Shown: in pieces, positions 41,071 to 61,601 of the stretch | Layout of the letters: each line of letters begins with the position of its first letter | How positions within the stretch are numbered: position 1 is the first letter of the stretch | Sequence record: NC_048077.1 | Direction: 5' to 3' (one strand) | Length of the DNA stretch: 64,000 nt | The notes under the pieces: model-generated | The model's database searches: none | What the model was told of the DNA's origin: nothing | The model's input: only the letters and a program-made list of their open reading frames with translations | Program-made: the position numbers and the translations under genes

Positions 41071-41100
41071 AAAAGGGGAGGCCAAACGGCCTCCCCTTTG
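41071..41100. terminator. bidirectional rho-independent terminator between convergent blocks
   Basis: AAAGGGGAGGCC-AAAC-GGCCTCCCCTTT with A-run 5' and T-run 3'. Confidence 0.9.
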
Positions 41101-41104
41101 TCGT

Positions 41105-41572
41105 TTATATCGCGAAACCAATTGCAATCAATGCAATCAATCTCGTAATTGTCAGTTGTAGATCCGCTGCTTTCTGATCCGCTATTCGCGCCTCACGTTC
41201 AGCGCTCAAATCTTTCGCAAGAGCGTTCGATCTCAATTCCTCAGACTTCGCCAAATCTAACAGCTTATTTCGTTCGTCGATAGTTTTATTCAGAACAACA
41301 ACCAAAGAGTTTACCTCTTCTGTCCTGTTCTTAGCGCCGGAATATAGCTTGATCAAATCAGCCATTCCTTTGTTATCCAGTGTTGCCAGTTTTTTATCTT
41401 CGAACTTTTTAACTGTTATTTCCGGCTTAGGTGGAACCTCAACCTTCTCCCACGTTAGATTTTCTACGCGGGGAATTTGTTGGATGGATGTTTTTTCCTG
41501 CTCTGGAATCTTATTAAGATTGACTCCACACCCAACCAACAAAAAAGCAACGAGAAGGATTAACTTCTTCAT
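41105..41572 (-). CDS. outer-membrane lipoprotein, o-spanin-like, with a hydrophobic C-terminus
   Basis: Lipobox LVG|C with Gly at +2; coiled-coil body; C-terminal LTITRLIALIAIGFAI. Confidence 0.6.
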   Translation of the reverse strand: MKKLILLVAFLLVGCGVNLNKIPEQEKTSIQQIPRVENLTWEKVEVPPKPEITVKKFEDKKLATLDNKGMADLIKLYSGAKNRTEEVNSLVVVLNKTIDERNKLLDLAKSEELRSNALAKDLSAEREARIADQKAADLQLTITRLIALIAIGFAI

Positions 41573-41850
41573 AGCTTTTTATATTCCTCCGCTAGATCAT
41601 CCATATCTTTGTTCTGATCAGCTTGTGCGTCAGGCTTCCTTTCTTCATTCAGCTTCTTAACATCGGTCGCAACTTCTTCGGCATCTTGCTTTTGCTGCTC
41701 GATAGCCTTCTCACGAATTTTGTCTTCCGCTTTCTGGAGTTCCGAAATACCGTTGGAAGTTTTACTGCGATTGGGACGAACCAAAAAGATTCCTACCACA
41801 ATCGCAAGAAATCCAACGAACGCCAGCCAATATTTTTTCAGCTTTTGCAT
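41569..41850 (-). CDS. i-spanin-like protein
   Basis: N-terminal TM (YWLAFVGFLAIVVGIFLV) plus coiled-coil; 4-nt overlap with the lipoprotein gene. Confidence 0.55.
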   Translation of the reverse strand: MQKLKKYWLAFVGFLAIVVGIFLVRPNRSKTSNGISELQKAEDKIREKAIEQQKQDAEEVATDVKKLNEERKPDAQADQNKDMDDLAEEYKKL

Positions 41851-41857
41851 ACATCAC

Positions 41858-42187
41858 TCACTGATTGTCAGATTTTGCGTTTGAGTCGTTCGCGTTGTTA
41901 CGGTTCGATCCGTTGTTGATAAGGTTTTCAGCCATAAACGCAACAGAGAAGAACGTAATGTGATTAGTTTCGCCAGAACCGATCAGGTTGATGAAAAGGC
42001 CAATACTGACGAACACACTCGCTACAGTAGAGAACGGGTTATTCGTCCAGTATTGACGCCAATCTAAACCTTCACGTTTTGTCTTTTGAACATAATTGAC
42101 AAGAACGCCACCTACCCAAGTGCAAACATAGCCGAACAACTGAAACAGATCATAGTGTTTAATTGCTTCTTGCACATCAGGTAACAT
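41858..42187 (-). CDS. holin-like membrane protein
   Basis: 109 aa, 2-3 TM segments, polar tail; upstream of the spanin-like pair. Confidence 0.5.
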   Translation of the reverse strand: MLPDVQEAIKHYDLFQLFGYVCTWVGGVLVNYVQKTKREGLDWRQYWTNNPFSTVASVFVSIGLFINLIGSGETNHITFFSVAFMAENLINNGSNRNNANDSNAKSDNQ

Positions 42188-42197
42188 GCTTTACCTC

Positions 42198-42437
42198 TTA
42201 AAGTTTACTATCGTCGATTTTGCCTTCTTTGAACAATTGCAGTTTGCGAGCTTTCCATTTGGCACTTACGTCCGTGAAAAATTCGCTTAACTGATCATCA
42301 TCCAGTTGAGAAGGACTACTCACTTCGCGAGCCTCAAGTTCTGCACGAAACAGATTCTGATATTCTTCTTGCAGCAAAGAAAGATCAGCGCTCAGTGAAG
42401 TAAATTCTTTTGCAGCCAATGCCACTACAGTTTTCAT
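42198..42437 (-). CDS. small virion/prohead-type protein (hypothetical)
   Basis: EYQNLF...L....VSSPSQL...EFF..V...W resembles a motif I recall from small proteins of T4-like and jumbo phages (unverified). Confidence 0.55.
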   Translation of the reverse strand: MKTVVALAAKEFTSLSADLSLLQEEYQNLFRAELEAREVSSPSQLDDDQLSEFFTDVSAKWKARKLQLFKEGKIDDSKL

Positions 42438-42454: not shown

Positions 42455-43087
42455 TTACCGGAGTCGTAACCGTAAATTAGCAATAATAGGACTTTTGCTA
42501 AGATCAACCGGAGTTGTTTGAGTGAGCGCCAGATTACCGCCCACCAGTTTAAGATCCGCTGTACTATCTTCGTCACCGACTGTCCCTAACGCAGCGATAT
42601 AGATTTGGTTTCCGTTATTCAAAACCGGAATCGTGTCACTGTTACATGCAAGATAACCGGAGCCGGAAGTTACCGCAAGCGCAAACCACGTAGGTTTTCC
42701 TGCACGATGGATTCGCGCTTGTCGTGTAGCAATAGGATCTGATTCATAACCATTAGGCGTAGGGGAAGTCATTCCCGTATCCCCCTGATAGTTGAGATTC
42801 AAATCTATTTCATTAACGTCAGAAGCGAGCGAAGAAATAATTCCATAACGCCACCCAACAAAACCCATATACTGCGATTGGTGCGGAGAAATAACATTAT
42901 AGAGATTCGCTTGTCGTGGCGCATTGGTCATGCCTGCGGCAAATCGTTGTCGAATAGTTGCGGTGTCCGGCATTGTGCCATCAAAAAACATTAATGCGGC
43001 AGGCAACGCATTCATTGAAGAACTACCGCTTTGCTTCTGCGCCCAACGATAAAAAAGAGCGCGGGGAGTTCCGGGAACAAAACGCAT
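42455..43087 (-). CDS. virion protein, paralog family A
   Basis: ALMFFDGTMP...AGKPTWF...GTVGDEDSTADLKL. Confidence 0.7.
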   Translation of the reverse strand: MRFVPGTPRALFYRWAQKQSGSSSMNALPAALMFFDGTMPDTATIRQRFAAGMTNAPRQANLYNVISPHQSQYMGFVGWRYGIISSLASDVNEIDLNLNYQGDTGMTSPTPNGYESDPIATRQARIHRAGKPTWFALAVTSGSGYLACNSDTIPVLNNGNQIYIAALGTVGDEDSTADLKLVGGNLALTQTTPVDLSKSPIIANLRLRLR

Positions 43088-43995
43088 TAGCTTGCCTCCA
43101 TTACGCTTGACGGTAAAGCAATTCGCGCAGAATGTATATTAGGAGAAATGCCGTCGCGTGCAACTGTGTCGGAAATAGTGATATCCGTTCCAACATCGAG
43201 AATCAATCCAATATAGTTATTTTTAACACCGTCAACCATATCGCTCGAATAAGACAGATCGCCAGTAGGACGAATCAAAACAATTTTATCAATTGTCTCA
43301 TTAACGAAAGCGTTATCCTTCGGCAATACTTCCCACAAATAAACAAAACCTTTCGCAGCGTTGCTCAGGCCGGTATAGCGAATATAACGCGCTTTGAAAT
43401 TAACGTAACCTGTACGCGCAGTGACTGGAACGTTAGTCCACGTAACCCCATCCAGACTGTAATCAATTTGAATTGCAGTGTAGTTGGTTGTGTTGTACGC
43501 CATCATTGTGAACTTGCGGAAATCAAATTCTGTTCCGTAGTCTGCAATCATCGCGCCCGGTGTTCCTCCAGTGTAACCACCAGTAGGATAAAATTCATAT
43601 TCGCGAGTGTTCTGCGGGAAGTATCCGGAATAGTTACGCAGCAATCCCAAAACGTTCGTTCCGTCATATGTTGCTTGCGTGTCTTGCGGATAAATTCGTA
43701 CAGGGAATGCTTGCACATAAAGCAGATCGTTTTGCGATCCATCCTGATAGAACTTCGCACCATATCCGGGATAGCGGGAATTGGAATTTCTGTGAGAGAG
43801 TGTGACTGTGCTATTAAAGTTTCCTGTAGCCACAAGAGAAACATCTAAGAAGCAACTTGCACGAACGTGTTTTAAATCTTCTCTGATATCGCCAGTGGGT
43901 TCCTTCCCACTGACCATAAACAGCGCTCCGCAAATATTGCTTTGCGCGAGAAAATCCATAATACGGTCGCGAACAGTTTTCAATTCGACGAGCAT
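43087..43995 (-). CDS. virion protein, family A, with a discoidin/F5-8-like insert
   Basis: ALFMVSGKEP; IQIDYSLDGVTWTNV...FKARYIRYT. Confidence 0.7.
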   Translation of the reverse strand: MLVELKTVRDRIMDFLAQSNICGALFMVSGKEPTGDIREDLKHVRASCFLDVSLVATGNFNSTVTLSHRNSNSRYPGYGAKFYQDGSQNDLLYVQAFPVRIYPQDTQATYDGTNVLGLLRNYSGYFPQNTREYEFYPTGGYTGGTPGAMIADYGTEFDFRKFTMMAYNTTNYTAIQIDYSLDGVTWTNVPVTARTGYVNFKARYIRYTGLSNAAKGFVYLWEVLPKDNAFVNETIDKIVLIRPTGDLSYSSDMVDGVKNNYIGLILDVGTDITISDTVARDGISPNIHSARIALPSSVMEAS

Positions 43996-44005
43996 ATTAT
44001 TTTCC

Positions 44006-44560
44006 TTAGTATTGGATATTAAGATCCGTCATGCGATAGCCTTGACCGAGGATGATATTGCTGCCGACGATTTTTAATTCAGCATCACTATCTTCGTTGC
44101 CGCACGTACCAATAATGATATCGTCAACACTGGTGCCACCAGTAAATGCGGCCCACGTACTTGCATCAGCAGTAGAGGTACTGGAACGCATTGCAATAAA
44201 GAACGTAGGAGTTCCGTTTGCAGCGCCGATCAGATCGGTTGTGACTGCGGTAAAGTTCACGTTGATTTTTCTGTTTCGCGAACCATCTGCATTTTTACCA
44301 ATAGTTACTGTAGGACGACGCCCGGTAGTAGTGGAATAATGCTGACAACCTAAGAACTGTGTTTGCGCTACGCCTAACGCAGCGAGAAACGCAGCAGGAG
44401 TAATCGTCATGTTCTGTGCAATCGTCGGAGGCAAAACCAGATCAGGCATTGTGCCACTAAACAGACCAACACGACACTGAACACTTGAAGACGTGGGAGT
44501 AAAAATTTCCATCAAAGCCGTGAGAGCTTTCGACGCAACCATATCCTTATTAGAAATCAT
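44006..44560 (-). CDS. virion protein, family A (minimal scaffold)
   Basis: VGLFSGTMP...ANGTPTFF...GTCGNEDSDAELKI. Confidence 0.7.
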   Translation of the reverse strand: MISNKDMVASKALTALMEIFTPTSSSVQCRVGLFSGTMPDLVLPPTIAQNMTITPAAFLAALGVAQTQFLGCQHYSTTTGRRPTVTIGKNADGSRNRKINVNFTAVTTDLIGAANGTPTFFIAMRSSTSTADASTWAAFTGGTSVDDIIIGTCGNEDSDAELKIVGSNIILGQGYRMTDLNIQY

Positions 44561-45639
44561 AATGCCCCCAATTCGGTAACAGGAAGAAGCGTAGTGAAGA
44601 ACGGAGGATATAAATTCGATCCTTGTTCAAAAGTTAAACCAGTTGGAATGAAAAGATCGTTTGAAGAAATTTGTTTAGGGTTATCTGTCACCGTATACGC
44701 AGACAACGCAACGTTTCGATCATCCATCAACGTTTTTTCAGAAGCCAGCATAATATTGCAACTGGCCTGAGAGCCAAATACGTTTAAATCGAATGTTGCC
44801 TGAGACATGTTGAATGGCATTAAAAGAACATGACCAATTTTTCCGAAAGTGCGTGGAGTACCATTCACGTATTTTCCGAAGAAGCGAAGGCCGCTAGGAT
44901 ACAGCCATTGCTGTACGCGAAGAATTCGAGTACGGAAATAACGAGCGGTCACTTTTCCATTTAAAATAGGAACCATTGTCGCATCGTTTGCAGTAGGTTG
45001 GACGTTCATTGTGGCAGTAACGTCTGTCCATACTCCGTTAATCTGTGCTTGAAGAACAGAGTTAAACATAGAGTTATTAACTTCTCCAGACTGACCTGAA
45101 ATTCGCATAACACCTGTGAGTTCAACATCAGCACCAAAATCATATTCCGCAACAATTGTTCTGGTGGGATCTGCCGGGTCAAGTTGTGCCCAAAAACCAC
45201 CCGTCGATGTTGCGAGAACATTTATGGAAGCAGCAGAACCAACAAAGCGAGGCATCTGATCCATAGCAAACATATTAATGATTTGCTGATTTGGAGTTGG
45301 GTACATGTTTGCGTTGGACGTGTCAGTGAGATCACGATAGCGATTGATTTTTGTTTTTGGTAAAACTTGTTTGCCATAAACAGTATCAACTTCTTGCCAT
45401 GCACTGTGTAGCGCCCAAAGCCGCGACTGTTCCGCACGGTTCAGAGGCTGCATGATCATTTTGCCGCCCGTGGAATACTGACCATTCATATAAGGAACAG
45501 CAACCAAACAATCGTTAATGATTTTTTGAATATCCGGTGCGTCAAGTTGCGCCTGCGTCGGAATAGCGCCTTCCATAAAGAAGGCCATATACAAAGAAGA
45601 CGCTACGACGCGTTTTTCTTGAAGATCTAAAAGTTTCAT
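44557..45639 (-). CDS. virion protein, family A, with a discoidin-like insert
   Basis: AFFMEGAIP; EYDFGADVELTGV...VLQAQINGVWTDV...VTARYFRTRI. Confidence 0.7.
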   Translation of the reverse strand: MKLLDLQEKRVVASSLYMAFFMEGAIPTQAQLDAPDIQKIINDCLVAVPYMNGQYSTGGKMIMQPLNRAEQSRLWALHSAWQEVDTVYGKQVLPKTKINRYRDLTDTSNANMYPTPNQQIINMFAMDQMPRFVGSAASINVLATSTGGFWAQLDPADPTRTIVAEYDFGADVELTGVMRISGQSGEVNNSMFNSVLQAQINGVWTDVTATMNVQPTANDATMVPILNGKVTARYFRTRILRVQQWLYPSGLRFFGKYVNGTPRTFGKIGHVLLMPFNMSQATFDLNVFGSQASCNIMLASEKTLMDDRNVALSAYTVTDNPKQISSNDLFIPTGLTFEQGSNLYPPFFTTLLPVTELGAL

Positions 45640-46232
45640 ACATCCTCGCTGATTTTCATTCGCAGACGTTCAACTGCGAAATTGATTTTGTAAGTTCCAT
45701 CGCCGTTATTTACCAGCGGCACGCCCATGTTCAGGAAGTCAGTGAAACTTAGTTCAAAGAAATTATAACAAGGCTGCGATGCGTTGACGGTACTGGAAGA
45801 AGTATTCTGCATACATGCAATCAATGTTGTGAAATTACTTGATGCAAGCGGAGTACCTAACGTGAAATCCATCGCCATGTAGCGACCGTCATTCATCAGT
45901 TCAATACGACAACATCCGGCAACGCTCGTATGCAAGACAGTAACGAGATCTGTCCTATTTGCAGTTAACCATGCACGAATTTGCGTTACCGTGGGGGCAT
46001 CACCATAAGTAGCCAGAATATTATGCCAGTCGCTATCGCTAATAGACCCGCCAGTTACCGCGATAAAGTTTGTATCTGAATTTATTGTACTGTCATTATC
46101 CAAACGCTCATCGCGTGCTTCAAAAGCGCCACTACCATAGAACCAAATTCCTACGGCAGTGTTTGAGCTTGTCGCAGCAGTCCAATCAATTTTCTGGCGA
46201 ATGTTTCGAAGTGCTTTAGAAACAATCATCAA
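45636..46232 (-). CDS. virion protein, probable divergent family A member
   Basis: Within the array; ATGA-coupled; GIWFYGSG. Confidence 0.6.
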   Translation of the reverse strand: MMIVSKALRNIRQKIDWTAATSSNTAVGIWFYGSGAFEARDERLDNDSTINSDTNFIAVTGGSISDSDWHNILATYGDAPTVTQIRAWLTANRTDLVTVLHTSVAGCCRIELMNDGRYMAMDFTLGTPLASSNFTTLIACMQNTSSSTVNASQPCYNFFELSFTDFLNMGVPLVNNGDGTYKINFAVERLRMKISEDV

Positions 46233-47152
46233 AGACTCCTGTTATTGAAACGAATCTTCGGACAGTAGAGAATATTCTCGCCGTCGCTTACAAGAGTTCG
46301 AAGCGTGAACGGTTTTGGAGTTCCATCGCCGTGTCCAACTTCTTCCGCGAAATATGGAATCAATGGACTCTTTTGATAGTCTCCGCAAACTCGCGTATTC
46401 GTATGCGCTACAACAACCCAACCGGGAAGCGTTGTTGGCGGCGTTGTGTACGGTTGCGAATCACTGAGAAGAGTAATTGCGCCCATAGTAGTAAACGTGC
46501 CAGTTGCATAAACACGAAAACGTTTTGCAGTTTGCGGATTAGATGCGGCGTACATTGTTGTGTCACCTGTCATCGGCGACCACGTTCCCAAACTCGTTTC
46601 GGTGCCATCATCAGCAACAGCATTCACACTGAAAATAAGTGCTGTTCCTTCTCGCACAAGATGCGTAAGTTTTACAGGAGAATCAAACTCAACAATAAGA
46701 TTTCCATCACCTACAGTTTCCGGACGATAATCAGCACCGACCAAAGGAGAAGCGCCAGCAAACAAATGGGAAATAGTTCTTTTTGATGCGGCTGTTTCCA
46801 AAATGCGATCAGGAATCAGAGCGCGAAAGTTAATGCCCCAAAGGTTTTTGTAGAAGCTAACGCCTTTATAAAAATAACGTGCCTGTGGAATCAAATGCAC
46901 AATGTTTGTTTTACTGATAAAAGAAACTATTCCTTTAGAAACACCTGCGGATTTATTGTAGAGATCTGCAAGTGAATCCTGTTTGAATATTTGTGCAACT
47001 GCGGCTTCATCTGCGGGAAGATTACCGGGCATTAAAAACGCTGTCCATGCAGCGCCAGTGAACATATGGCGCGTGACAGTATTTTCAGCAGTGTTCCCCA
47101 ATCGCGCACCAAACAAACTATGTGCGCGAACATGCGTATCAATTATTTTCAT
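46229..47152 (-). CDS. virion protein, family A, with a discoidin-like insert
   Basis: AFLMPGNLP; VEFDSPVKLTHL...QTAKRFRVY. Confidence 0.7.
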   Translation of the reverse strand: MKIIDTHVRAHSLFGARLGNTAENTVTRHMFTGAAWTAFLMPGNLPADEAAVAQIFKQDSLADLYNKSAGVSKGIVSFISKTNIVHLIPQARYFYKGVSFYKNLWGINFRALIPDRILETAASKRTISHLFAGASPLVGADYRPETVGDGNLIVEFDSPVKLTHLVREGTALIFSVNAVADDGTETSLGTWSPMTGDTTMYAASNPQTAKRFRVYATGTFTTMGAITLLSDSQPYTTPPTTLPGWVVVAHTNTRVCGDYQKSPLIPYFAEEVGHGDGTPKPFTLRTLVSDGENILYCPKIRFNNRSL

Positions 47153-47619
47153 TATCCTACATGGCCTCCGACTGGAATAAATACATAGTCAGGTTCCTTC
47201 ACGCTGATTGTACTTACAAGGAAATCAACAATCGGGTTATCCTGAGCAACGTATTCAATTCCATTTGCTTTGGGAGTAAACGGCGCAGAACTTACATACG
47301 TGTTATCCAGATCTTTTGCTTCTGTATTTTGCGTGTTCATCTGCGGAAACACAAAAGTTTTTTGCCACTGCGTTTTGAAATACTGCGAACTGTCCGGATA
47401 GACGAGCGATCCTCGCATCATCCACGGACGCATAAGGATATAGCCAGAAAATTGTTCGGCAGTAAAAATCAAAGCGTTTTTAGTAATGGCACTGAAACCG
47501 ATAACGTAGCTTGTATCAAATACAGTTTGAACCGATTTCAATTGACCGCGAAACGATCCCCAAACCAAACCGTTCTGAATAAAATAGTTCTTATCATATG
47601 CAGGAACGTTAACAATCAT
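47152..47619 (-). CDS. virion protein (hypothetical)
   Basis: Within the array; TAATG coupling. Confidence 0.65.
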   Translation of the reverse strand: MIVNVPAYDKNYFIQNGLVWGSFRGQLKSVQTVFDTSYVIGFSAITKNALIFTAEQFSGYILMRPWMMRGSLVYPDSSQYFKTQWQKTFVFPQMNTQNTEAKDLDNTYVSSAPFTPKANGIEYVAQDNPIVDFLVSTISVKEPDYVFIPVGGHVG

Positions 47620-47632
47620 TTCTTTCTCCTGC

Positions 47633-48652
47633 TTACAGTTTGTTTATTGTTGATTGAGCCAATCCATAACCTGCGCCATTAGGCGAAGATAAATAAAATT
47701 GACCGATGCGGAAAATACTCAACTTGGACAAATCGAATGCCAAAGAATAATCAACCGGAGTTGAAAAACTTGTGTCGCTTTGTTTGTAGAGTTTCAATTG
47801 CACGCCGTTCACATACAGACGAACTACCCCTCCAACGCGACGCAAAGTTAGAGTAGCACCATACGGAACGTTTTCAGAAACATAAATCTCATCAGATTTG
47901 GTATACGTGCGCGTAAGGATATAGCGAACCAGTTGCGGTGAGTTCGACATGTATTGGAAATACAAAGAAAGACCATCAACCGGATTATTGTTTGAACCTA
48001 TCGCACTTGTAAAAGAGAACATAGGATAAACAGCAAAGCTGCCGTTGAAATAGTTGATCGCTGTCTGAAATTCGAAATCACCTGTTCCAATCTGACGCAT
48101 CAATCCTGTTTGAATATCATCAAATTGGTAGTACGGAGGATCTGCATATCCGGTACGGAACCAAATTGAAGGTATCGTTGCACTTGAGACTGGAATCGTG
48201 TCGATATCATTCAAACGCAATCCGAAAGCATTGACAGTAACTACACTACCTTCGCCCGTTGAGTCTACAGAAGATCCCGAATCGACGTGGAGCAATTTAA
48301 CATCTTTTCCAATCTCAAAAGAGAATGGAATGATACCGCCTAAAATAAGATGCGTAGGTTTTCCGACTGCGCTGCATGTGATATTGCATTTCGAAAAGTT
48401 AAGCTGATTTCCTACCAGCGTGCGCGTACAGTCATTTCCTGTTCCGAGCAGTACGCCTATATCACTTGTCAGTTTTGTAACGTCAAAATAATAGCCTGCG
48501 CCATTTGGCCTGAAATTCAAGCAAGTCAAAAGATCCTTTTCTGTCTTGCCTGTATTCAGTGAAATAACGTAAGCGGCTTTATCGTCTGAGGCAGACGCAA
48601 ATAAACGCGTTAGCTGCGGAATCAGACTCAAATCAAACACTTTGTATTCCAC
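47633..48652 (-). CDS. virion protein with a ConA/LamG-like C-terminal beta-sandwich
   Basis: GTG with AAGGTG RBS; AVGKPTHLIL; LTLRRVGGVVRLYVNGV. Confidence 0.65.
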   Translation of the reverse strand: MEYKVFDLSLIPQLTRLFASASDDKAAYVISLNTGKTEKDLLTCLNFRPNGAGYYFDVTKLTSDIGVLLGTGNDCTRTLVGNQLNFSKCNITCSAVGKPTHLILGGIIPFSFEIGKDVKLLHVDSGSSVDSTGEGSVVTVNAFGLRLNDIDTIPVSSATIPSIWFRTGYADPPYYQFDDIQTGLMRQIGTGDFEFQTAINYFNGSFAVYPMFSFTSAIGSNNNPVDGLSLYFQYMSNSPQLVRYILTRTYTKSDEIYVSENVPYGATLTLRRVGGVVRLYVNGVQLKLYKQSDTSFSTPVDYSLAFDLSKLSIFRIGQFYLSSPNGAGYGLAQSTINKL

Positions 48653-48678
48653 GATTTCACCTTATAAATTCAATCAAG

Positions 48679-50253
48679 TTAAATTTTCTTTCCCTGAACT
48701 ATTTGGAAGTTCTTAATGTAGGCCGTCGGCAAACTCGCCGCACCGTAGACACCCAACATTTGAATAGGTTGCAGTGTGTACGGAAGGATTGTGTATTGGA
48801 ACGAATCAACTACGGTGCCATCCACGCTGAATTTATGTGTTCCTGTGTCTGAATCGTACTGATACACAACACGAACAAAATCAGTTGTAAGCAATGCTTT
48901 ATAGTTAGCAAATGAACGAGCAACTTTAGTTCCTTGTTGGTTGTTCCAGATACAGAATCCAGTTTCGTTGCTTCTATCCAAAGATAAAATAAAACGATCT
49001 GTGTACGAAGTTTGTACCACAATTAAATCCATCTCCGCATTCGAGGCAGTTGTATCTTGCCGATAATCAAACGAGAGATAGAAAGATTTAGTAAAATCAA
49101 TATCAACGGTGGCGGGAAACGACAATCGCGATCCAGATGTGCCTCTAATGCTACCGTCGCTTTGTTTAGGCCATCCGGTAAACGTCAAATCGTTTCCTAG
49201 ATAGTCTTTTGACGGACTGCTATTAAAATTCTCTGCCGAGATTGCGATACGTGCATTAGGTTCAATCCACGAAGGCAAAGTATTTGCAGCGCTTAAAGTT
49301 TTCGCCGTGCGTACTTGCAACACTTCCGGGAATTCACCTGTAGAAATTGCGAGTGATTCGAGTTCGATGAGTTCACCACTTCCTTTTGCGCCAACCTTAA
49401 CAGCAATCATGCGAATGTCTGCGGTTCCTGCGGCAAGCGCACCGTTATTGCTATCAGCGATCAACAGAATTGCGTAACCGATATTTTTTGTTACTTTCGT
49501 AGTTGATTTGTCGCCAATGCTAACAGGAAGACAACGACGCACCGAAGAGTTTCCTACAGCGCGTAAAATATCAGTTGTTATTGCGCTAGGTGCAGCGTTG
49601 GTTGCTACGTTTACAGGAACAGATAAGTTAACCGATGTTCCGGAAGCAGTAGCGCCAGCAGTTGTTGATGCCGCGATGATCTGCAAACTAGCCGCCGCGT
49701 TTTTGTTTGGCGAATCAGACAGAGCAGCGTCAAAAGTTATCAAACTATCAAACACAAGATCCGCAACGGTTGCTGTTTGCGCTGTCATATTTCCAACGTA
49801 ATCTGTAAGCTGCATCGGAGCAGAAACAGGGAAGCCGGGAAACAGCCCAATGGACGGATGCAATTTCATTTTCTTATTGCCTGTCAGCAAATCAGTTGCA
49901 TACGCCGTGTCAATATCAAACGTGGATGCGCTCGCTGTGGTGCGACGAGGAATAATATTTTTCGGATAGTGAATAGTTACGCCGAGTTTTGGATCGTACA
50001 CACTGCCGGGAACTGCTTTAATTCCGTGTGAGTACGGCTGCATCATTAACAACCCTTCCGATGTAGGTTGCAAAACGATGCGGCTTGCGCCAATACAGTC
50101 AGCAATAAGTTTACGATGATCTAAAAAGTATTGCGAAAGATCCGAAGGAATTGATCCTTCGAAAAAATACGCTTCCACTTCAATTCCGGTACTCCACGTT
50201 CCGGGAAGTTGCGCCACGGAAAACGGAAGTAAGTTAGAACCTAAAAGCCTCAT
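48679..50253 (-). CDS. virion protein, family A, with a C-terminal LamG-like domain
   Basis: AYFFEGSIP...VKVGAKGSGELI; FYLSFDY...F.SVDGTVVDS. Confidence 0.7.
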   Translation of the reverse strand: MRLLGSNLLPFSVAQLPGTWSTGIEVEAYFFEGSIPSDLSQYFLDHRKLIADCIGASRIVLQPTSEGLLMMQPYSHGIKAVPGSVYDPKLGVTIHYPKNIIPRRTTASASTFDIDTAYATDLLTGNKKMKLHPSIGLFPGFPVSAPMQLTDYVGNMTAQTATVADLVFDSLITFDAALSDSPNKNAAASLQIIAASTTAGATASGTSVNLSVPVNVATNAAPSAITTDILRAVGNSSVRRCLPVSIGDKSTTKVTKNIGYAILLIADSNNGALAAGTADIRMIAVKVGAKGSGELIELESLAISTGEFPEVLQVRTAKTLSAANTLPSWIEPNARIAISAENFNSSPSKDYLGNDLTFTGWPKQSDGSIRGTSGSRLSFPATVDIDFTKSFYLSFDYRQDTTASNAEMDLIVVQTSYTDRFILSLDRSNETGFCIWNNQQGTKVARSFANYKALLTTDFVRVVYQYDSDTGTHKFSVDGTVVDSFQYTILPYTLQPIQMLGVYGAASLPTAYIKNFQIVQGKKI

Positions 50254-50751
50254 TTAGAATTCCCCTGATACGCGATTGGCACTCGCATAGAATTTCCCGT
50301 TAAGAAAATTCGCGTCCGACAAAATTAAATCCGCACCGCTTCCTTCTTTGCCAATCGTGAGCACTAAGAAACCACCGTAAGGAGTTGATCCGATGTTAGT
50401 GTTAATCACGATGCAGTTATACAGACTGAGAAACGAATCAACGGTTCCAATAAAACTCGCAGTTAAAAGAGCCTTCACGCGAAACTTTAATTTGTTCGTT
50501 CCCGTATTCAACCACGAAATAGGATAGCAGTTGTTGAAAGTTGTCAGATTGAATTGCGCAGTAGCCCCGATTGCAGTAAGCGTTGTTCCTTCACTTACAA
50601 CGATGTTTTGAGGATCGGGAATATTCGCAGCGGCAACCGTGTGAACGATGTTTTCAAGACCGTACTTAACAGGCGGTTCGTCAGACGGACGCTTACCTTC
50701 TGCCGGAATAGGCACGTTAGACGTGTAAATGGGAAGACGAATTATTTCCAC
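50254..50751 (-). CDS. virion protein, family A
   Basis: GTG with GGAG RBS; LTIGKEGSGADLILSD. Confidence 0.65.
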   Translation of the reverse strand: MEIIRLPIYTSNVPIPAEGKRPSDEPPVKYGLENIVHTVAAANIPDPQNIVVSEGTTLTAIGATAQFNLTTFNNCYPISWLNTGTNKLKFRVKALLTASFIGTVDSFLSLYNCIVINTNIGSTPYGGFLVLTIGKEGSGADLILSDANFLNGKFYASANRVSGEF

Positions 50752-50833
50752 GATTTTCTCCTTTGTTTAATTCAAATTAGATGAATCGGATACTTACAGA
50801 TTAATAATAGGAGAGTAATCAGTAAGAATGAAT

Positions 50834-51886
50834 TTAAAGATCAAGAACCGCCTCGAATTCAAAATTTTCAACTTCTTTGACGGTAACAGTTGGCACTGTA
50901 TTTGGAAGATCCGAACCAGATTGCAGTAAGTCTGAAATGAAATCTCTCACAACTAAACGTATTTCATCTTTCCTGCGCGTCGCACTTATGCCAAAACCTA
51001 ACGAGACATTCTCATCAGGTTCACTCGATGCCACGAATGGAAGTGCAGTCAGATTCTTAGCGACGGCGTTTGCCGAAGTATATTCAGGCAAGCGATACGA
51101 ATATGAGGAACTATACGGCGTGTAATAGTATTCCTGATAGCTGGAGCGTACCAAATAAATACCGGGCGAGGATTCTGTAGTGCGACTAAAATTTGTTGTC
51201 CCTACAACGCTAGGAGAAATAGCTGTGGCTGTAGCTTTGCAGTTTCCATCCATTGAAACTTTCAATTGATTCAAATATGAAGTGTATACTCGCGTATATT
51301 CCCATCGTCCAAAACTGTTATAGGATGAATAGGAGTACGTGTAGTTTTGAGCAACACTTAAATCTACAGGCTGAGTCGCTTTCAAATTGTTTTGAGTTAA
51401 ACGTGTTGGCATTAAAACCATTTGAGTTGCCAACACACTGCCATCGCCCACATAATAACGATATGGAGTGTTTTTAATTCCTCCGTATCCAATATCTCCT
51501 TTCTTCAAAATACCTTGAGTGCTTGTGGAAAAATTGCTTCCGGATTCCCACAAACTAGGTGCGAGACAAAACAACTTAAACAGATCAAGAGTTGTTCGAG
51601 AAAAAGTTGTTGGGAATGTTAAAGTTGATTGTGTCTCAAGAGGCAAATCTTTTATGTTCATGTATGTGAGATAAAGCCGCGCACCATACACGCCAGCAAG
51701 AGGTGAACAATTGAGATTTTTATCGGGATCAATATCGAAAGAAATCGATCTGGCATTTGGAAGTATGTTTATAACACTGGCAATGTCAGAAGGTTTCGGC
51801 GTGTTTGCATCGAAAAGATATTGTATAGACTCCGATTCTTTTAGTTCTCTTTGGGTGATAACTGTTCCTACACTGCAAAATTTCAT
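50834..51886 (-). CDS. virion / receptor-binding candidate, AT-richer than neighbours
   Basis: 350 aa, Tyr/Ser/Thr-rich; YLFDANTP resembles the family A N-terminal motif. Confidence 0.6.
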   Translation of the reverse strand: MKFCSVGTVITQRELKESESIQYLFDANTPKPSDIASVINILPNARSISFDIDPDKNLNCSPLAGVYGARLYLTYMNIKDLPLETQSTLTFPTTFSRTTLDLFKLFCLAPSLWESGSNFSTSTQGILKKGDIGYGGIKNTPYRYYVGDGSVLATQMVLMPTRLTQNNLKATQPVDLSVAQNYTYSYSSYNSFGRWEYTRVYTSYLNQLKVSMDGNCKATATAISPSVVGTTNFSRTTESSPGIYLVRSSYQEYYYTPYSSSYSYRLPEYTSANAVAKNLTALPFVASSEPDENVSLGFGISATRRKDEIRLVVRDFISDLLQSGSDLPNTVPTVTVKEVENFEFEAVLDL

Positions 51887-52005: not shown

Positions 52006-52033
52006 ATAAAAAAGGGAAGGCCGAAGCCCTCCC
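52006..52033 (-). terminator. rho-independent terminator with a C(UUCG)G loop
   Basis: Minus strand GGGAGGGC-TTCG-GCCTTCCC followed by TTTTTT. Confidence 0.9.
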
Positions 52034-52048
52034 CATCAAATTACTGAA

Positions 52049-58067: not shown

Positions 58068-61000
58068 TTACAGATCAACAACCGAAATGGTGTACGTGCA
58101 ATTTGAACCAGTGAAGAAGACTTCAATATATTTGAAATCTCGCGTTGTGTCGTGTTCCATAAAATATGTTCCACGCGCAGTAGCTCGAATCGCAGTTACA
58201 CCCACGCGGCGCAAGTGCATTTCACCATTACCGCCCGTCCAATCAACTCGAATACGGAATGCGCCTCTGCGTGCTTGTGATTCAACGTTATGAATGAAAA
58301 CACGACTGACATATTTTCCAGAGTTATAACTTCCGGACATTCCTTTCACACTATCATCACGCGTGTTGTAGTCCCATGCCGTACCGTCACCAGTACCTTG
58401 CATTCGCACATCGTAATAAGGCGTGTAATCTAATTCCGCATAGTGGGCAATATAAATTTCATGTTGACCACCGGAGTTAGGAAGGTTTCGATAAATCGGG
58501 CCAGACGGATAATCGTAAGGCGCTTGTCCACCTTTCGGACTTGAATCAAGCCACAAACCATCACGGAAAATATCTACGCGGTCAGGAACAGTGTAGTGTT
58601 CCGACCACAGAATAAATACGCCCGTATTGTTTCGATAGAGTTGGCGACGCCATTCAACGCCTTGACCGCCAGAAGATGCAGCACTACCAAACGGAGTACC
58701 ATCATCATCAAGTATCGTACATACGCCAACGTTGCGCGTGAATTCAGAACGTGAAAGATCAGAAAGAACGAGATAAAAATACTCATCACCTTCTGTCAAT
58801 TTATCCTGATACACTTGCACCGAAACTTGAACCGTTTTCGCGCCAACAGGGAATAAAAGTTGGCGAGGTTCAATTGGAATGTAGTCTTGCGGATCACCAA
58901 CGTTTCCGTTTGTGCGAACATCGGAATAACCGCCGAGGCCGCCCCACAATCCGCTCATGCCGTTAATCAGTTGATGACTTCCAATCTGATTGCGCACGCC
59001 ATCCATATCTAAATTTTCTCCAGCGTATGCGCCAGAGTAGTTCACGTAAAAACGATTCGCCAACATGTTCGCGCTATGGAATACGTTTGATTGTCCAGTA
59101 AGAACCATCATACCTGTACCACGACGAACAGAGTTTTCTAACGCTTTCGTAAACGCGATTCCGATTTTCGCAGCAGGATTTGGATTCGCAGAAACAAAGA
59201 TAACGATAACGTATTGGTCAAAGATAAGAGCAGAAGGCGCACCACCATAAAGTTGAGTCCATCCAGCAACATCAACCGTGAATTGCATACTTCTTAAATG
59301 GTTTACTAACGTCGAACCTAAATCATTCGCGCCGCCTTCGTTGATGCGATACGCGCCCGTAGGATAAGGACTGCCAGTAAATGAATCACCAACAATTAAA
59401 ATCTTATCGTTTCGGTGTCCGTGCCCTAACCAATCAATTGCATTAGTTAAGAATTGGCGAGACTGCGCATTGTTTGCCAGATTGTTGTTCGTGAAAGCGT
59501 CAAGACTGCCGCCCCACACAACACGCGTATTCTGATATTCAATGAATGAGAAAGGAGAAACGCCGCCCGGTGTAATCATACGACGCGCAGTAGTTTCATT
59601 ACTTACGCATCGTGCAGTACCGTCGCGAGTTTGCACCGTCATTGTAATCGCACGCCCCATAACTTCTTCACTCGCAGTAACAGTAAATGTCACCGTCGAG
59701 TAACCGAGATTGCTTCCTTCAACAACTGAAACATCGTTGACGGAGAATGTCGGATAGTTACCGAGATCGATACATGGATGTTCAACGCTCACCACAAAAT
59801 CTTTTGCTTCATACATCGGCAGTTTATGGAAACGAACATCACGCAATTCTGCGTTATGTTTTACGCCGTAGTATTTACTTCCATCCGGATCATCCAACAC
59901 TTTATAGTAGTTGGAATGCTGGCTTGCCTGATCGTTAAAAAGACCTTTGTTTGTCACCGCAGGCTTTGAAAAGAGTTCTGTACCAGTGACATAAGGCCAG
60001 CCGTTCGGATCAAAGGAGTAGCCAACGTCGAAAGTAGAATTCGGATCGCTGGACATTGAACCTTTGTACATTTCATTTATTGCGTTTCCTTCACCAACGC
60101 CGGGACTACCAAAACAATTATATGCCCCGCGATACTGGAAGTTTGTATCTTCCCAAACACGGCGACTTGCACCTATGCGATACAATGCAGCAGGCAAACC
60201 ACCAGTGAGACGGTTGTAAGAACACTCATCAAACATCGTAACGAGTACCCAATAGTTTCCGTCAATGCTATTTAAATATGCCGCCATTGCCGCAGCATTC
60301 GCGATACCATCAGCACTACCTTCACCACCTGCGCCGTGGATATCAAAATTTCTGCGTTCGACAAGTTGGCGAGTTGCTTTACTGATTTTATAGACATTCA
60401 GTGATCGACCGTCGTTGTAGCGTGTGCCGTTAATAATAGTGAAACCGGGATTTGATCCGGAAGCATTAGGCACACCATAACCAACAACGTGACAGAAAAA
60501 TTGAGAACGTGCGGCAAGAGATTGCGCACTATCATTCTGCCAAGTTATTTTGTGATATCCTGCTTGAATACCGTTACGCCAATCATCCGGCTTATACGGA
60601 TAAACACTGATATCATAATCGACACTGAAACCATCTTGCGGATCAGCACAACAATAATCTTTGTAGAAGAACGGAGAATTCAAACGCACATCGTCGTTGA
60701 TATCAACGTCAGCGCACATGAATGGAATCCATGTTCCCGGTTGACCGCTCATTGCAGATTGTCGCGCTTCTCCAGTGTCAGAAAACCAATAACCCTGAGA
60801 CGCAAGGTATCCAAGTTTATAGTGAAGCTGTTCAACACCGTTCCATGCGACGTGAGTATTGTACGCATTAATATTCGCATCGTGTGCGCGTTTGGTGCAA
60901 ACAATATTCGTGTTGCGATTGGCATAAATACCAATTGGACTAAAAATTGCGTTGAAGTTTGCAGTGCCTTCGCCTGGCCCTTTCTGCAACACAACAAAAG

Positions 61001-61601
61001 AAATTCCTTCTTTGATTGCATTGCGGATCGCTGCCGCCATTGTATCGTTAATGGTTCGGCCTGTACTTGAAAGGAGAAAAACAGTTAATGCAAACTGTTT
61101 GAAATAGTGCGGTTGACCATCGTAGCCGTAAGCACCAGCCGCAATTTCATTAACGTGATGCGGAAGAATATCATAGCGTTTCTTCTGCAAGAAATAACAA
61201 AACTGACCCCATTGCCCAAAGTTAACGCGATCAGTAACTGACGCGCTATCACTCATGATCAGAATACTTTTTCCGTGAGTGAAGTTCGCGCCCATATCCA
61301 TCATAATGCGAAGTTGGCGAAGCATTCCCGTAATGCTGTTTACGTTTTCTTTTGAGTAGTCGCCGACCCAACCGCCGCTAGGATTAACGTCAAAGGAATA
61401 CGGAGTAAGAAACGCGCCATTCATAAACGCGGCACCGTAACCGCAAATAAATCCGGAAGCGTGACCATCAATTGCAATTCCCGTCATCGTTCCGCGATCT
61501 TCTGCCATGCTTGCGTCAGCCCAACTTTGGGTATTGGGGCCACCGCCGCCCGAATACCCGAAAGTAAGACCTCGCAGATATAAACAACTCCGCTTGATCA
61601 T
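58068..61601 (-). CDS. large multidomain adhesin-like virion protein (ILEI-like, Calx-beta, GATase/DUF4350-like modules)
   Basis: ILEI-like GRSLNVY..S.....VERRNFDI...VLV..FDE...IGA...YRGAY..FG; Calx-beta SVNDVSVVEG...VTFTV...T.DGTA and F..G.KTV.V.V..D...EGDE.F.L.LS...G..TILDDD. Confidence 0.8.
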   Translation of the reverse strand: MIKRSCLYLRGLTFGYSGGGGPNTQSWADASMAEDRGTMTGIAIDGHASGFICGYGAAFMNGAFLTPYSFDVNPSGGWVGDYSKENVNSITGMLRQLRIMMDMGANFTHGKSILIMSDSASVTDRVNFGQWGQFCYFLQKKRYDILPHHVNEIAAGAYGYDGQPHYFKQFALTVFLLSSTGRTINDTMAAAIRNAIKEGISFVVLQKGPGEGTANFNAIFSPIGIYANRNTNIVCTKRAHDANINAYNTHVAWNGVEQLHYKLGYLASQGYWFSDTGEARQSAMSGQPGTWIPFMCADVDINDDVRLNSPFFYKDYCCADPQDGFSVDYDISVYPYKPDDWRNGIQAGYHKITWQNDSAQSLAARSQFFCHVVGYGVPNASGSNPGFTIINGTRYNDGRSLNVYKISKATRQLVERRNFDIHGAGGEGSADGIANAAAMAAYLNSIDGNYWVLVTMFDECSYNRLTGGLPAALYRIGASRRVWEDTNFQYRGAYNCFGSPGVGEGNAINEMYKGSMSSDPNSTFDVGYSFDPNGWPYVTGTELFSKPAVTNKGLFNDQASQHSNYYKVLDDPDGSKYYGVKHNAELRDVRFHKLPMYEAKDFVVSVEHPCIDLGNYPTFSVNDVSVVEGSNLGYSTVTFTVTASEEVMGRAITMTVQTRDGTARCVSNETTARRMITPGGVSPFSFIEYQNTRVVWGGSLDAFTNNNLANNAQSRQFLTNAIDWLGHGHRNDKILIVGDSFTGSPYPTGAYRINEGGANDLGSTLVNHLRSMQFTVDVAGWTQLYGGAPSALIFDQYVIVIFVSANPNPAAKIGIAFTKALENSVRRGTGMMVLTGQSNVFHSANMLANRFYVNYSGAYAGENLDMDGVRNQIGSHQLINGMSGLWGGLGGYSDVRTNGNVGDPQDYIPIEPRQLLFPVGAKTVQVSVQVYQDKLTEGDEYFYLVLSDLSRSEFTRNVGVCTILDDDGTPFGSAASSGGQGVEWRRQLYRNNTGVFILWSEHYTVPDRVDIFRDGLWLDSSPKGGQAPYDYPSGPIYRNLPNSGGQHEIYIAHYAELDYTPYYDVRMQGTGDGTAWDYNTRDDSVKGMSGSYNSGKYVSRVFIHNVESQARRGAFRIRVDWTGGNGEMHLRRVGVTAIRATARGTYFMEHDTTRDFKYIEVFFTGSNCTYTISVVDL

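What the first reader, a model, noticed from the sequence alone, without database searches (positions are those of the whole stretch)
42455..51886. Array of about 11 paralogous virion genes: shared bracket scaffold with swappable glycan-binding-like inserts
Seen: a recurring N-terminal motif (hhF.G..P: FFDGTMP, FSGTMP, FMEGAIP, LMPGNLP, FFEGSIP, VSGKEP), a middle A.G.PT(W/F/H) motif, and a C-terminal G(T/K)(V/I/C)G....(A/G)(D/E)L.L motif (TVGDEDSTADLKL, TCGNEDSDAELKI, TIGKEGSGADLIL, KVGAKGSGELI). Between or after these sit either nothing (184 aa member), discoidin/F5-8-like inserts (43087, 44557, 46229) or LamG-like domains (47633, 48679). Inference: one attachment module diversified into a combinatorial set of surface fibres or receptor/EPS binders, perhaps the hair-like appendages of some jumbo myoviruses.
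Basis: partly seen in the sequence, partly recalled or inferred. Interest (0 to 1): 0.68.

Follow-up and report, generated by a model that had tools for sequence, protein, structure and literature searches.

The report
Garland-type baseplate connector gene array
A giant "hairy" phage of the potato pathogen Dickeya carries a conserved row of eleven unannotated late genes, most of them built on the small fold that other phages use as a "garland" tying their tail fibres together, and several carry added sugar-binding-like domains.

Summary
The window is Dickeya jumbo phage vB_DsoM_JA11. The finding covers genes JA11_072 to 082, all on the minus strand.

**Observation.** The quoted motifs are real and exceed chance, but "11 paralogues" overstates it.
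- Firm members of one small family (S): g072, g074 and g081. g076 is a probable member.
- g073, g075, g077, g079 and g080 give only weak matches to the S profile. In g073, g077 and g080 an N and a C segment flank a large middle insert. All five score above every reversed-sequence control.
- g078 and g082 show no relation.

**Identity.** The AlphaFold model of g074 (pLDDT 90) matches the solved "garland" protein gp014 of Agrobacterium phage 7-7-1 (Z 11.2, next best 5.6). The S profile also finds gp012 and gp014 by sequence. Garland proteins share the T4 gp8 / A511 gp105 connector fold. They form dimers that chain around tail-fibre tips.

**Best reading (0.6).** These are baseplate or tail-fibre-network connectors, some fused to discoidin-like or concanavalin-like domains, acting as accessory host-surface binders. 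The g072–g075 block is the most diverged stretch between JA11 and JA13. Those two phages differ in host range despite identical annotated fibres.

**Not shown.** The hair idea is untested. Virion presence rests on homology alone. No large member could be modelled because the structure machine was down.

The parts
50834..51886 (-). g082 (JA11_082, 350 aa), first gene of the operon. Relation to the scaffold not detectable.
   Evidence: hhalign against the S profile scores 15.8, within the null range. phrog_21316, function unknown. Relatives carry 1-3 copies of similar 300-370 aa genes at this position.
50254..50751 (-). g081 (165 aa), a divergent stand-alone member of the small (S, garland-like) family.
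   Evidence: S profile E 9.5e-9. hhalign 86.8%. A six-frame scan of the whole genome with the S profile finds it at E 4.8e-6. No hydrophobic segment supports the 'membrane' annotation.
48679..50253 (-). g080 (524 aa): large N-module (about 1-320, related to g077) followed by a concanavalin/LamG-like C-domain (about 330-524).
   Evidence: hhalign to g077 87-93% over residues 22-288. C-domain matches the g079 C-domain at 99%. Pfam Laminin_G_3 E 1e-3, below cut-off. Two collinear weak matches to S (26-40 to 23-37; 114-173 to 254-307). Erwinia-phage orthologues are 314-322 aa and lack the C-domain.
47633..48652 (-). g079 (339 aa): 150-aa N-module followed by a LamG-like C-domain.
   Evidence: N-module is a stand-alone 150-aa gene in Yersinia phage fHe-Yen9-02. 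C-domain matches g080 at 99%. Weak match to S at the PT(W/F/H) motif, score 19.3 against a null maximum of 16.2. The BFVD model of the JA13 orthologue matches the g074 model with probability 0.63.
47152..47619 (-). g078 (155 aa), conserved in the array but unrelated to the scaffold by every test.
   Evidence: hhalign score 9.3, equal to the null. No Pfam family and only a sub-threshold PHROG match (phrog_28837, unknown function, E 0.0027, residues 1-25).
46229..47152 (-). g077 (307 aa): large member. Garland-like N and C segments flank a middle insert of about 180 residues.
   Evidence: Two collinear S matches (23-46 to 30-53; 110-173 to 235-291). After deleting 80-200, hhalign gives 75%, E 2.5e-5, against a null score of 11.6. 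Protein comparison gives E 6e-4 over the N motif. No Pfam hit for the insert in any of 12 family members.
45636..46229 (-). g076 (197 aa): probable divergent small member, paired with g077.
   Evidence: S profile E 0.004 over HMM positions 20-140. hhalign score 22.9, above the null. BFVD models of the JA13 and Yoloswag orthologues match the g074 model with probability 0.93 and 0.91.
44557..45639 (-). g075 (360 aa): large member with a discoidin-like (F5/8 type C-like) middle domain.
   Evidence: Pfam F5_F8_type_C E 5e-5 at residues 146-241, 23.9 bits against a cut-off of 28.2. Atlas nearest clusters are F5/8 type C proteins. N motif matches S at E 0.002. C half matches g073 at 84-93%. JA11-JA13 amino-acid changes are confined to residues 72-291.
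44006..44560 (-). g074 (184 aa): minimal small member. This is the protein that was modelled.
   Evidence: AlphaFold2 pLDDT 89.7, pTM 0.85. VIA Z 11.2, rmsd 2.9 A, 134 of 139 residues against 9rkv_A, which is 7-7-1 gp014. Foldseek E 4e-4.
43087..43995 (-). g073 (302 aa): large member with a discoidin-like domain.
   Evidence: Pfam F5_F8_type_C E 9.3e-5 at residues 151-218, below cut-off. hhalign to g075 84-93%. Weak two-segment match to S.
42455..43087 (-). g072 (210 aa): small member, paralogue of g074.
   Evidence: hhalign to g074 99.5%. Both fall in phrog_17152. Genome scan E 5.5e-33.
52013..52034 (-). Intrinsic terminator ending the upstream g083 transcript. The array operon starts after it.
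   Evidence: 9-bp stem with 6 GC pairs and a T-run.
41072..41099 (.). Bidirectional intrinsic terminator ending the operon g082 to g068.
   Evidence: 12-bp stem with 8 GC pairs, scored on both strands.
41105..42437 (-). g071 to g068: small genes that close the same operon. They look like a lysis cassette, which argues for late expression.
   Evidence: g068 has a lipobox (LVGC) and a C-terminal hydrophobic segment. g069 has an N-terminal TM segment and weak Rz-like spanin PHROG hits. g070 is predicted to be a membrane protein, its strongest 19-residue hydrophobic window starting at residue 52.

Best explanation
Genes g082 to g072 form the front of one late operon of jumbo phage JA11. The operon is conserved gene for gene across the Salmondvirus, Alexandravirus, Sasquatchvirus and Yoloswagvirus clade (similar arrays in more distant contigs).

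Most of its products are built on the small alpha/beta module known from the 'garland' proteins of Agrobacterium phages 7-7-1 (gp014, gp012) and Milano (gp125, gp127). This is the fold of the T4 gp8 / A511 gp105 tail-fibre-network connectors.
- The small proteins g072, g074, g081 and probably g076 are the bare module.
- The large proteins g073, g075, g077 and g080 appear to keep its N-terminal helix-strand (hhF.G..P) and its last strands, around an inserted domain of about 150-180 residues. That insert is discoidin-like in g073 and g075.
- g079 and g080 also carry a C-terminal concanavalin/LamG-like domain.

Inferred mechanism, by analogy with the solved relatives: the modules dimerise, plausibly as large-plus-small heterodimers. 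The dimers chain into a network at the baseplate periphery that ties tail fibres and spikes together. The added lectin-like domains give that network weak, multivalent affinity for host surface polysaccharide, so the proteins act as accessory receptor binders that can shift host range.

Shown here: the fold and sequence kinship of the small members, the conserved order, the operon structure and the mosaic divergence. Inferred: the scaffold inside the large members, dimerisation, location in the virion and glycan binding.
For: **Fold.** The g074 model has pLDDT 89.7. It matches 9rkv_A at Z 11.2, rmsd 2.9 A, 134 of 139 residues, with the next best at 5.6. Foldseek gives E 4e-4.

**Identity of the match.** 9rkv_A is 7-7-1 gp014. 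PMC12796354 describes it as the garland protein on the distal parts of the short and long fibres. Milano gp125/gp127 form homo- or heterodimers, have the gp8/gp105 fold and form beads-on-a-string chains (PMC10811340).

**Sequence.**
- The S profile hits gp012 at E 9.6e-9 and gp014 at 6e-5.
- Protein comparison gives 89.7%, E 1.8e-6, and aligns both conserved motifs.
- gp012 is the only hit in a six-frame scan of the whole 7-7-1 genome.
- T4 gp8 gives Z 5.1-5.4 and the phi812 arm 5.2. The Atlas gives TM 0.54 to a Phage-Gp8/BW3TFN cluster.

**Scaffold in the large members.**
- Collinear two-segment matches, all above reversed nulls.
- In a genome-wide scan of Y3, the only extra weak hits fall inside the g080 and g077 orthologues.
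- BFVD large-type models match the g074 model with probability 0.87 across 364 alignment columns.

**Context.**
- Same strand as the tail-fibre genes g089, g090, g094 and g095, and next to g083, a PHROG 'virion structural protein'.
- Terminators bracket the operon, which ends in a probable lysis cassette.
- No signal peptide or TM segment in any array protein.

**Lectin parts.**, plus P0140, which combines an S-like segment with a true F5/8 type C domain.

**Variation.**
- g073-g075 are 86-89% identical in nucleotides between JA11 and JA13, and g072 is 92%. g076-g078 and the fibre genes are at least 99% identical.
- Changes avoid the scaffold motifs.
- JA11 plates on D. dianthicola and JA13 does not, although the annotated fibres are identical.
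Against: - No virion proteome or structure exists for this phage group, so presence in the particle is by homology only.
- No large member could be modelled. Their scaffold rests on weak profile signals, each with probability under 10% except g077 after excision.
- No S member reaches any Pfam model, including BW3TFN and Phage-Gp8.
- Discoidin and LamG hits are all below Pfam cut-offs.
- g078 and g082 do not fit the scheme.
- The JA11/JA13 comparison covered only 30-64 kb of the genome, so other differences could explain the host range.
Confidence: 0.6

Rival explanations
1. The array encodes the 'hairs' that line the contractile tail of hairy myoviruses. Garland-fold dimers would be threaded like beads on a string into thin filaments tipped or studded with lectin-like domains, attached along the sheath rather than at the baseplate.
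For: JA11-type phages have the hairy morphology, and the hair proteins are unknown (PMC6143709). Relatives of this fold form beads-on-a-string chains (PMC10811340). About ten distinct products would suit a complex appendage. The array is conserved in Y3, a hairy phage.
Against: The solved homologue sits at the distal baseplate and fibre region, not on the sheath. The S profile finds nothing in Lu11 or CBB, both reported as hairy, nor in PaBG. These negatives are weak because the first-look filter may miss distant kin. Nothing here links the proteins to the sheath.
Confidence: 0.15
2. The proteins are not retained in the virion. They would act inside the cell as assembly chaperones or scaffolds for fibres, or in some other late intracellular role.
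For: There is no proteomic evidence for any member. The operon also holds non-structural lysis genes. In distant contigs the array is followed by anti-defence genes such as Acb1.
Against: 7-7-1 gp012 and gp014 are annotated as virion structural proteins and fall in a PHROG labelled so, and gp014 is seen in the cryo-EM map. Lectin-like domains and mosaic divergence are typical of exposed virion parts.
Confidence: 0.12
3. They decorate the head, neck or collar rather than the baseplate.
For: The second-rank structural matches are neck or connector chains of phages Sf14 (Z 5.6) and Bas63 (Z 5.5).
Against: Those Z values lie in the range the tool calls common. The garland match stands far above them and is backed by sequence.
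Confidence: 0.08

Closest known systems
Garland proteins of Agrobacterium phages 7-7-1 (gp014, paralogue gp012; PDB 9RKV chain A) and Milano (gp125, gp127)
   Same: Same fold (Z 11.2 over nearly the whole chain). Shared motifs: hhY/F.G..P, GT.TWF and G.V......DLKL. Small stand-alone proteins present as paralogues, in a tail-fibre gene neighbourhood.
   Different: The JA11 members are 25-70 residues longer. There are three or four small ones instead of two. They alternate with 300-520 aa proteins that seem to embed the module around lectin-like domains, which is not described for 7-7-1 or Milano. Identity is only about 15%. The host phage is a 255-kb jumbo phage.
T4 gp8 and Listeria phage A511 gp105 (BW3TFN, baseplate wedge 3 to tail fibre network connectors; Pfam PF09215 and PF25691)
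   Same: Fold class as stated by Sonani et al. (PMC10811340). Here Z is 5.1-5.4 to T4 gp8 and 5.2 to the phi812 arm protein. These are dimeric connectors that link receptor-binding proteins to the baseplate.
   Different: No sequence match to these Pfam models in any of 128 family members. The similarity is at a level the aligner calls common. Those proteins sit near the baseplate end of the fibres, whereas garland proteins sit at the distal end.
Multi-protein branched receptor-binding complexes of large myoviruses (e.g. Ackermannviridae tail-spike complexes, phiKp24 fibres)
   Same: Many adjacent paralogous structural genes with conserved attachment parts and variable binding parts. Mosaic exchange between close relatives.
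   Different: Those use trimeric spikes or fibres with enzymatic or beta-helix domains. Here the shared part is a small dimer-forming connector fold, and the variable parts are single lectin-like domains.

Membership tests
Garland protein family (7-7-1 gp014/gp012, Milano gp125/gp127) | Three-dimensional fold of the solved garland protein | tested here: met
   The g074 model matches 9rkv_A at Z 11.2, rmsd 2.9 A, 134 of 139 residues, with the next hit at 5.6. The chain was identified as gp014. Tested for g074 only.
Garland protein family (7-7-1 gp014/gp012, Milano gp125/gp127) | Detectable sequence homology to a garland protein | tested here: met
   The S profile hits gp012 at E 9.6e-9 and gp014 at 6e-5. 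hhalign gives 89.7%, E 1.8e-6. gp012 is the sole hit in a whole-genome scan of 7-7-1. This holds for the S profile (g072, g074, g081), not for the large proteins.
Garland protein family (7-7-1 gp014/gp012, Milano gp125/gp127) | Forms homo- or heterodimers that chain around fibre tips | not testable with these tools
Garland protein family (7-7-1 gp014/gp012, Milano gp125/gp127) | Present in the virion at the baseplate or fibre periphery | not testable with these tools
   No proteome or map was found for Salmondvirus, Alexandravirus or Sasquatchvirus.
Garland scaffold inside the large proteins (g073, g075, g077, g079, g080) | N and C segments fold together into the garland module around the insert | tested here: inconclusive
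   Matches are weak but collinear and above the null. BFVD large-type models match with probability 0.87, 0.63 and 0.51. No structure model of a large protein was obtained because the machine did not answer in 13 tries.
Pfam BW3TFN (PF25691) / Phage-Gp8 (PF09215) | Match to the Pfam model | tested here: not met
   None of the 128 S-family members hits either model at E 0.1 or better. Only fold-level resemblance exists.
F5/8 type C (discoidin) domain, PF00754 | Score above the Pfam gathering cut-off (28.2 bits) | tested here: not met
   g073 scores 23.0 bits and g075 23.9 bits. 3 of 27 g075-family members and 2 of 12 scanned g073-family members give sub-threshold hits. None in the g077 family. 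Atlas neighbours of g075 are discoidin proteins, but the model has low confidence. A discoidin-like fold remains plausible but is unproven.
Concanavalin A-like lectin/glucanase (Laminin_G_3, PF13385) | Score above the Pfam gathering cut-off (27.6 bits) | tested here: not met
   g080 scores 19.7 bits, E 1e-3. 5 of 25 scanned g079/g080 family members hit, best E 4.3e-5. The g079 C-domain is linked only through g080.

The most novel reading that the evidence does not exclude
The whisker-like 'hairs' of the Y3/JA11 lineage of hairy jumbo myoviruses are beads-on-a-string filaments. They would be made of garland-fold large-plus-small heterodimers from this array, with discoidin-like and LamG-like domains as glycan-binding beads. 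That would make them a new kind of phage appendage, built from connector modules rather than trimeric fibres, and one that tunes host range.
Probability: 0.15. Interest if true: 0.75.

Novelty: new variant of a known kind. Interest (0 to 1): 0.52.

Why it matters
- **Annotation.** It gives a first structural and functional handle on about ten 'hypothetical' proteins conserved in a whole clade of jumbo phages of plant pathogens (Dickeya, Erwinia), plus Yersinia phage fHe-Yen9-02. These phages are being considered for biocontrol.
- **Garland family.** It extends the recently described garland / tail-fibre-network connector fold from two-gene sets in 70-kb phages to a ten-gene array with domain insertions. 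The family has about 150 sequence clusters in public data and is missed by Pfam.
- **Host range.** It offers concrete candidates (g072-g075) for a published puzzle: JA11 and JA13 differ in host range despite identical annotated tail fibres.
- **Hairs.** It offers a testable candidate for the unknown hair proteins.

Tried and rejected
**Searches that gave nothing**
- Pfam and PHROG scans of all 11 proteins gave no function.
- The sequence search of PDB with the S and g075 profiles was empty.
- The word-based homologue search found only close orthologues.
- The search for related loci with the broad S alignment failed for lack of a conserved stretch. A narrower alignment worked.
- No virion proteome for these genera was found in the literature. 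PaBG has a 14-protein virion list, but PaBG lacks the family.

**Sequence tests with limited yield**
- All-vs-all BLASTP and hhalign on shallow alignments linked only sub-groups and gave no small-to-large link.
- jackhmmer linked g082 to g080, but hhalign did not reproduce it. I did not pursue this.
- Excision scans for g073, g075 and g080 improved scores only slightly.

**Ideas tested**
- One idea was that PaBG gp80/gp81 or Pfam 'Gp80' could be S relatives with proteomic support. The S profile finds nothing in PaBG or Lu11, or in CBB.
- The authors' 'membrane protein' label for g081 was rejected, because no hydrophobic segment is present.

- Structure prediction of a large member (g075 family A5/A7, g077 family A9): the first two jobs were interrupted.
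This gives no verdict on binding.


Full report
**What the window is.** The region is 100% identical to Dickeya phage vB_DsoM_JA11 (MH389777, 255,356 bp, genus Salmondvirus), and window coordinates equal record coordinates. JA11 is one of the jumbo "hairy Myoviridae" of Day et al. 2018. That paper states that the proteins forming the hairs are unknown (PMC6143709). The finding covers JA11_072 to JA11_082, called g072 to g082 here. These are eleven minus-strand genes annotated as hypothetical, or in one case "membrane", proteins.

**Check of the observation.** I tested whether they mean common descent in steps.
- BLASTP links only g072 to g074 and g075 to g080.
- I collected the syntenic arrays of Y3, Yoloswag, Alexandra, AD1, SNUABM phages, Yersinia phage fHe-Yen9-02, JA29 and several metagenomic contigs. 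I then built one alignment per gene.
- Profile-profile comparison gave four links: g072~g074 at 99.5%, g073~g075 at 84-93% (C halves), g077~g080 at 87-93% (N modules), and g079~g080 at 99% (C domains). It gave nothing for g076, g078 or g082 and no small-to-large link.
- A full HMMER search of 1.84 billion representatives with the small-family profile found 151 clusters. Nearly all are stand-alone proteins of 160-215 residues.

With the resulting 140-sequence profile the picture sharpened.
- g081 is a member (E 9.5e-9). g076 probably is (E 0.004). The N motif of g075 matches at E 0.002.
- In hhalign, seven of the nine other families score above all 18 reversed-sequence controls.
- In g073, g077 and g080 the match is split into an N segment and a C segment, collinear with the small protein and separated by about 180 extra residues.
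- Removing residues 80-200 of g077 raises the match to 75% probability, E 2.5e-5, against a null score of 11.6.
- A six-frame scan of the whole Y3 genome finds the three small genes and the g081 orthologue. Its only further weak hits lie inside the g080 and g077 orthologues.
- In JA11's own genome the profile hits only g074, g072 and g081.

So the "bracket" idea has real statistical support. That support is firm for four small genes and suggestive for five large ones. It is absent for g078 and g082.

**What the module is.** AlphaFold2 on g074 with a 128-sequence alignment gave pLDDT 89.7 and pTM 0.85. An exhaustive structural search gave one outstanding match: PDB 9RKV chain A, with Z 11.2, rmsd 2.9 A and 134 of 139 residues aligned. 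The next best was 5.6, and Foldseek gave E 4e-4. That chain is gp014 of Agrobacterium phage 7-7-1.

The 7-7-1 paper calls gp014 the garland protein. [quoted passage not shown]

The kinship is also visible in sequence.
- The small-family profile hits gp012, the paralogue two genes away, at E 9.6e-9, and gp014 at 6e-5.
- The tool's own hhalign gives 89.7%, E 1.8e-6, and aligns GT.TWF and the G.V....DLKL stretch.
- gp012 is the only hit in a scan of the whole 7-7-1 genome.
- Both 7-7-1 proteins are annotated as virion structural proteins in the record and fall in a PHROG labelled "virion structural protein".

For phage Milano, Sonani et al. describe the equivalent gp125 and gp127. These are paralogues of about 30% identity that form homo- or heterodimers. 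Their fold resembles T4 gp8 and A511 gp105, the "BW3TFN" connectors, and they are arranged like beads on a string (PMC10811340). In line with this, T4 gp8 gives Z 5.1-5.4 and the phi812 arm protein Z 5.2. The ESM Atlas lists a Phage-Gp8/BW3TFN cluster at TM 0.54. No family member reaches any Pfam model, so current annotation pipelines miss this branch.

**The added domains.**
- *Discoidin-like.* g073 and g075 give sub-threshold F5/8 type C hits (E 9e-5 and 5e-5), repeated in a few relatives. The Atlas neighbours of g075 are discoidin proteins, though its model there is poor. A distant family member, P0140, combines an S-like segment with a discoidin domain above the Pfam cut-off.
- *LamG-like.* g080 gives a sub-threshold Laminin_G_3 hit. 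Five of 25 scanned g079/g080 relatives do too, best E 4e-5.
- *Unidentified.* The insert of g077 and of the g080 N module has no recognisable family.

I therefore call these parts lectin-like with moderate confidence only.

**Organisation.** The gene order 082-081-080-079-078-077-076-075-074-(075'-074')-073-072 is the same in all 18 relatives examined. More distant jumbo-phage contigs carry similar arrays of alternating large and small genes. The paralogues are therefore old and vertically inherited, not freely shuffled.

Large and small genes alternate. Both partners of the pair 075/074 are related to the partners of 073/072, and Erwinia phages carry an extra 075/074 pair. This points to duplication of a two-gene unit. 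Together with the Milano heterodimer models, that is my reason to propose large-plus-small heterodimers. It remains an inference.

Domain fusion has occurred. In Erwinia phages the g080 orthologue lacks the LamG-like domain. In Yersinia phage fHe-Yen9-02 the g079 N module is a separate 150-residue gene.

Intrinsic terminators at 52034-52013 and 41099-41072 bracket one transcription unit, g082 to g068. Its last genes look like a lysis cassette of lipoprotein, Rz-like and membrane proteins, which fits late expression. The array proteins have no signal peptide or membrane segment. The unit lies on the same strand as, and 5-12 kb from, the annotated tail-fibre genes.

**Variation.** Between JA11 and JA13, g073-g075 are 86-89% identical in nucleotides and g072 is 92%. 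By contrast g076-g078 and the fibre genes g089-g093 are at least 98.8% identical. Within 30-64 kb, the g073-g075 part is the most diverged fully aligned block. Amino-acid changes in g075 fall only in residues 72-291. Those in g074 fall in loops and avoid the three motifs.

Day et al. report that JA11 plates on D. dianthicola and JA13 does not, although their three annotated fibres are identical. They left this unexplained. The g072-g075 block is a candidate, but I compared only part of the genome.

**Mechanism proposed.** The modules form dimers that chain into a network at the periphery of the baseplate and hold fibres and spikes together. The inserted and appended lectin-like domains add multivalent binding to host polysaccharide. 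I put this at 0.6.

Rivals:
- Tail hairs built as beads on a string (0.15).
- A non-virion late role (0.12).
- Head or neck decoration (0.08).

The hair idea is attractive for two reasons: the fold is known to make bead chains, and the hair proteins are unknown. Against it, the solved homologue is at the baseplate, and the profile finds nothing in the hairy phages Lu11 and CBB. These negatives are weak.

**Limits.**
- No large member could be modelled, and no complex could be predicted, because the machines were unavailable (calls listed under Tried and rejected).
- Virion presence, dimerisation, location and glycan binding are all inferred.

**Verdict.**
- This is a new, much expanded and domain-decorated variant of a known kind, the garland / tail-fibre-network connectors, not a new kind of system.
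- Earlier notes of this scan on the same genome concerned other loci and did not bear on this one.

Noticed in passing
window 41105-42187 (g068, g069, g070): Probable lysis cassette at the end of the array operon. g068 has a lipobox (LVGC), a coiled middle and a C-terminal hydrophobic segment (lipoprotein PHROG). g069 has an N-terminal TM segment and weak Rz-like spanin hits. g070 is a membrane protein and a possible holin.
   Followed up: partly
window 42455-45639 compared with L032 (JA13) and L033 (JA29): Mosaic pattern of divergence. JA11 and JA13 differ by 8-14% in nucleotides in g072-g075 but by under 1% in g076-g078. JA11 and JA29 are 99% identical in g073 yet 76-89% in g074-g079. This implies recombination breakpoints inside the array.
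   Followed up: partly
window 47633-50253; L012, L013, L017: Domain shuffling of the LamG-like module. g080 is 524 aa in JA11, 674-737 aa in two metagenomic relatives and 314-322 aa (no C-domain) in Erwinia phages. The g079 N module is a separate 150-aa gene in Yersinia phage fHe-Yen9-02.
   Followed up: partly
L029 8544-9008; L037 12023-12478: In distant jumbo-phage contigs the array is directly followed by an Acb1 (anti-CBASS nuclease) gene, and further on by a Tad6/KMPT-N protein. In JA11 the lysis genes sit at that position instead.
   Followed up: no
window 58068-61601 (g092): A 1177-aa protein with Calx-beta and ILEI domains lies between the annotated tail-fibre genes. Its residues 907-992 resemble the N terminus of the fibre protein g090 (BLASTP E 0.001).
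   Followed up: no
L043 5387-6765 (Agrobacterium phage 7-7-1): gp012 is a closer sequence relative of the JA11 small family than the solved gp014. The pair gp014 / gp013 / gp012 mirrors Milano gp125 / gp126 / gp127.
   Followed up: partly
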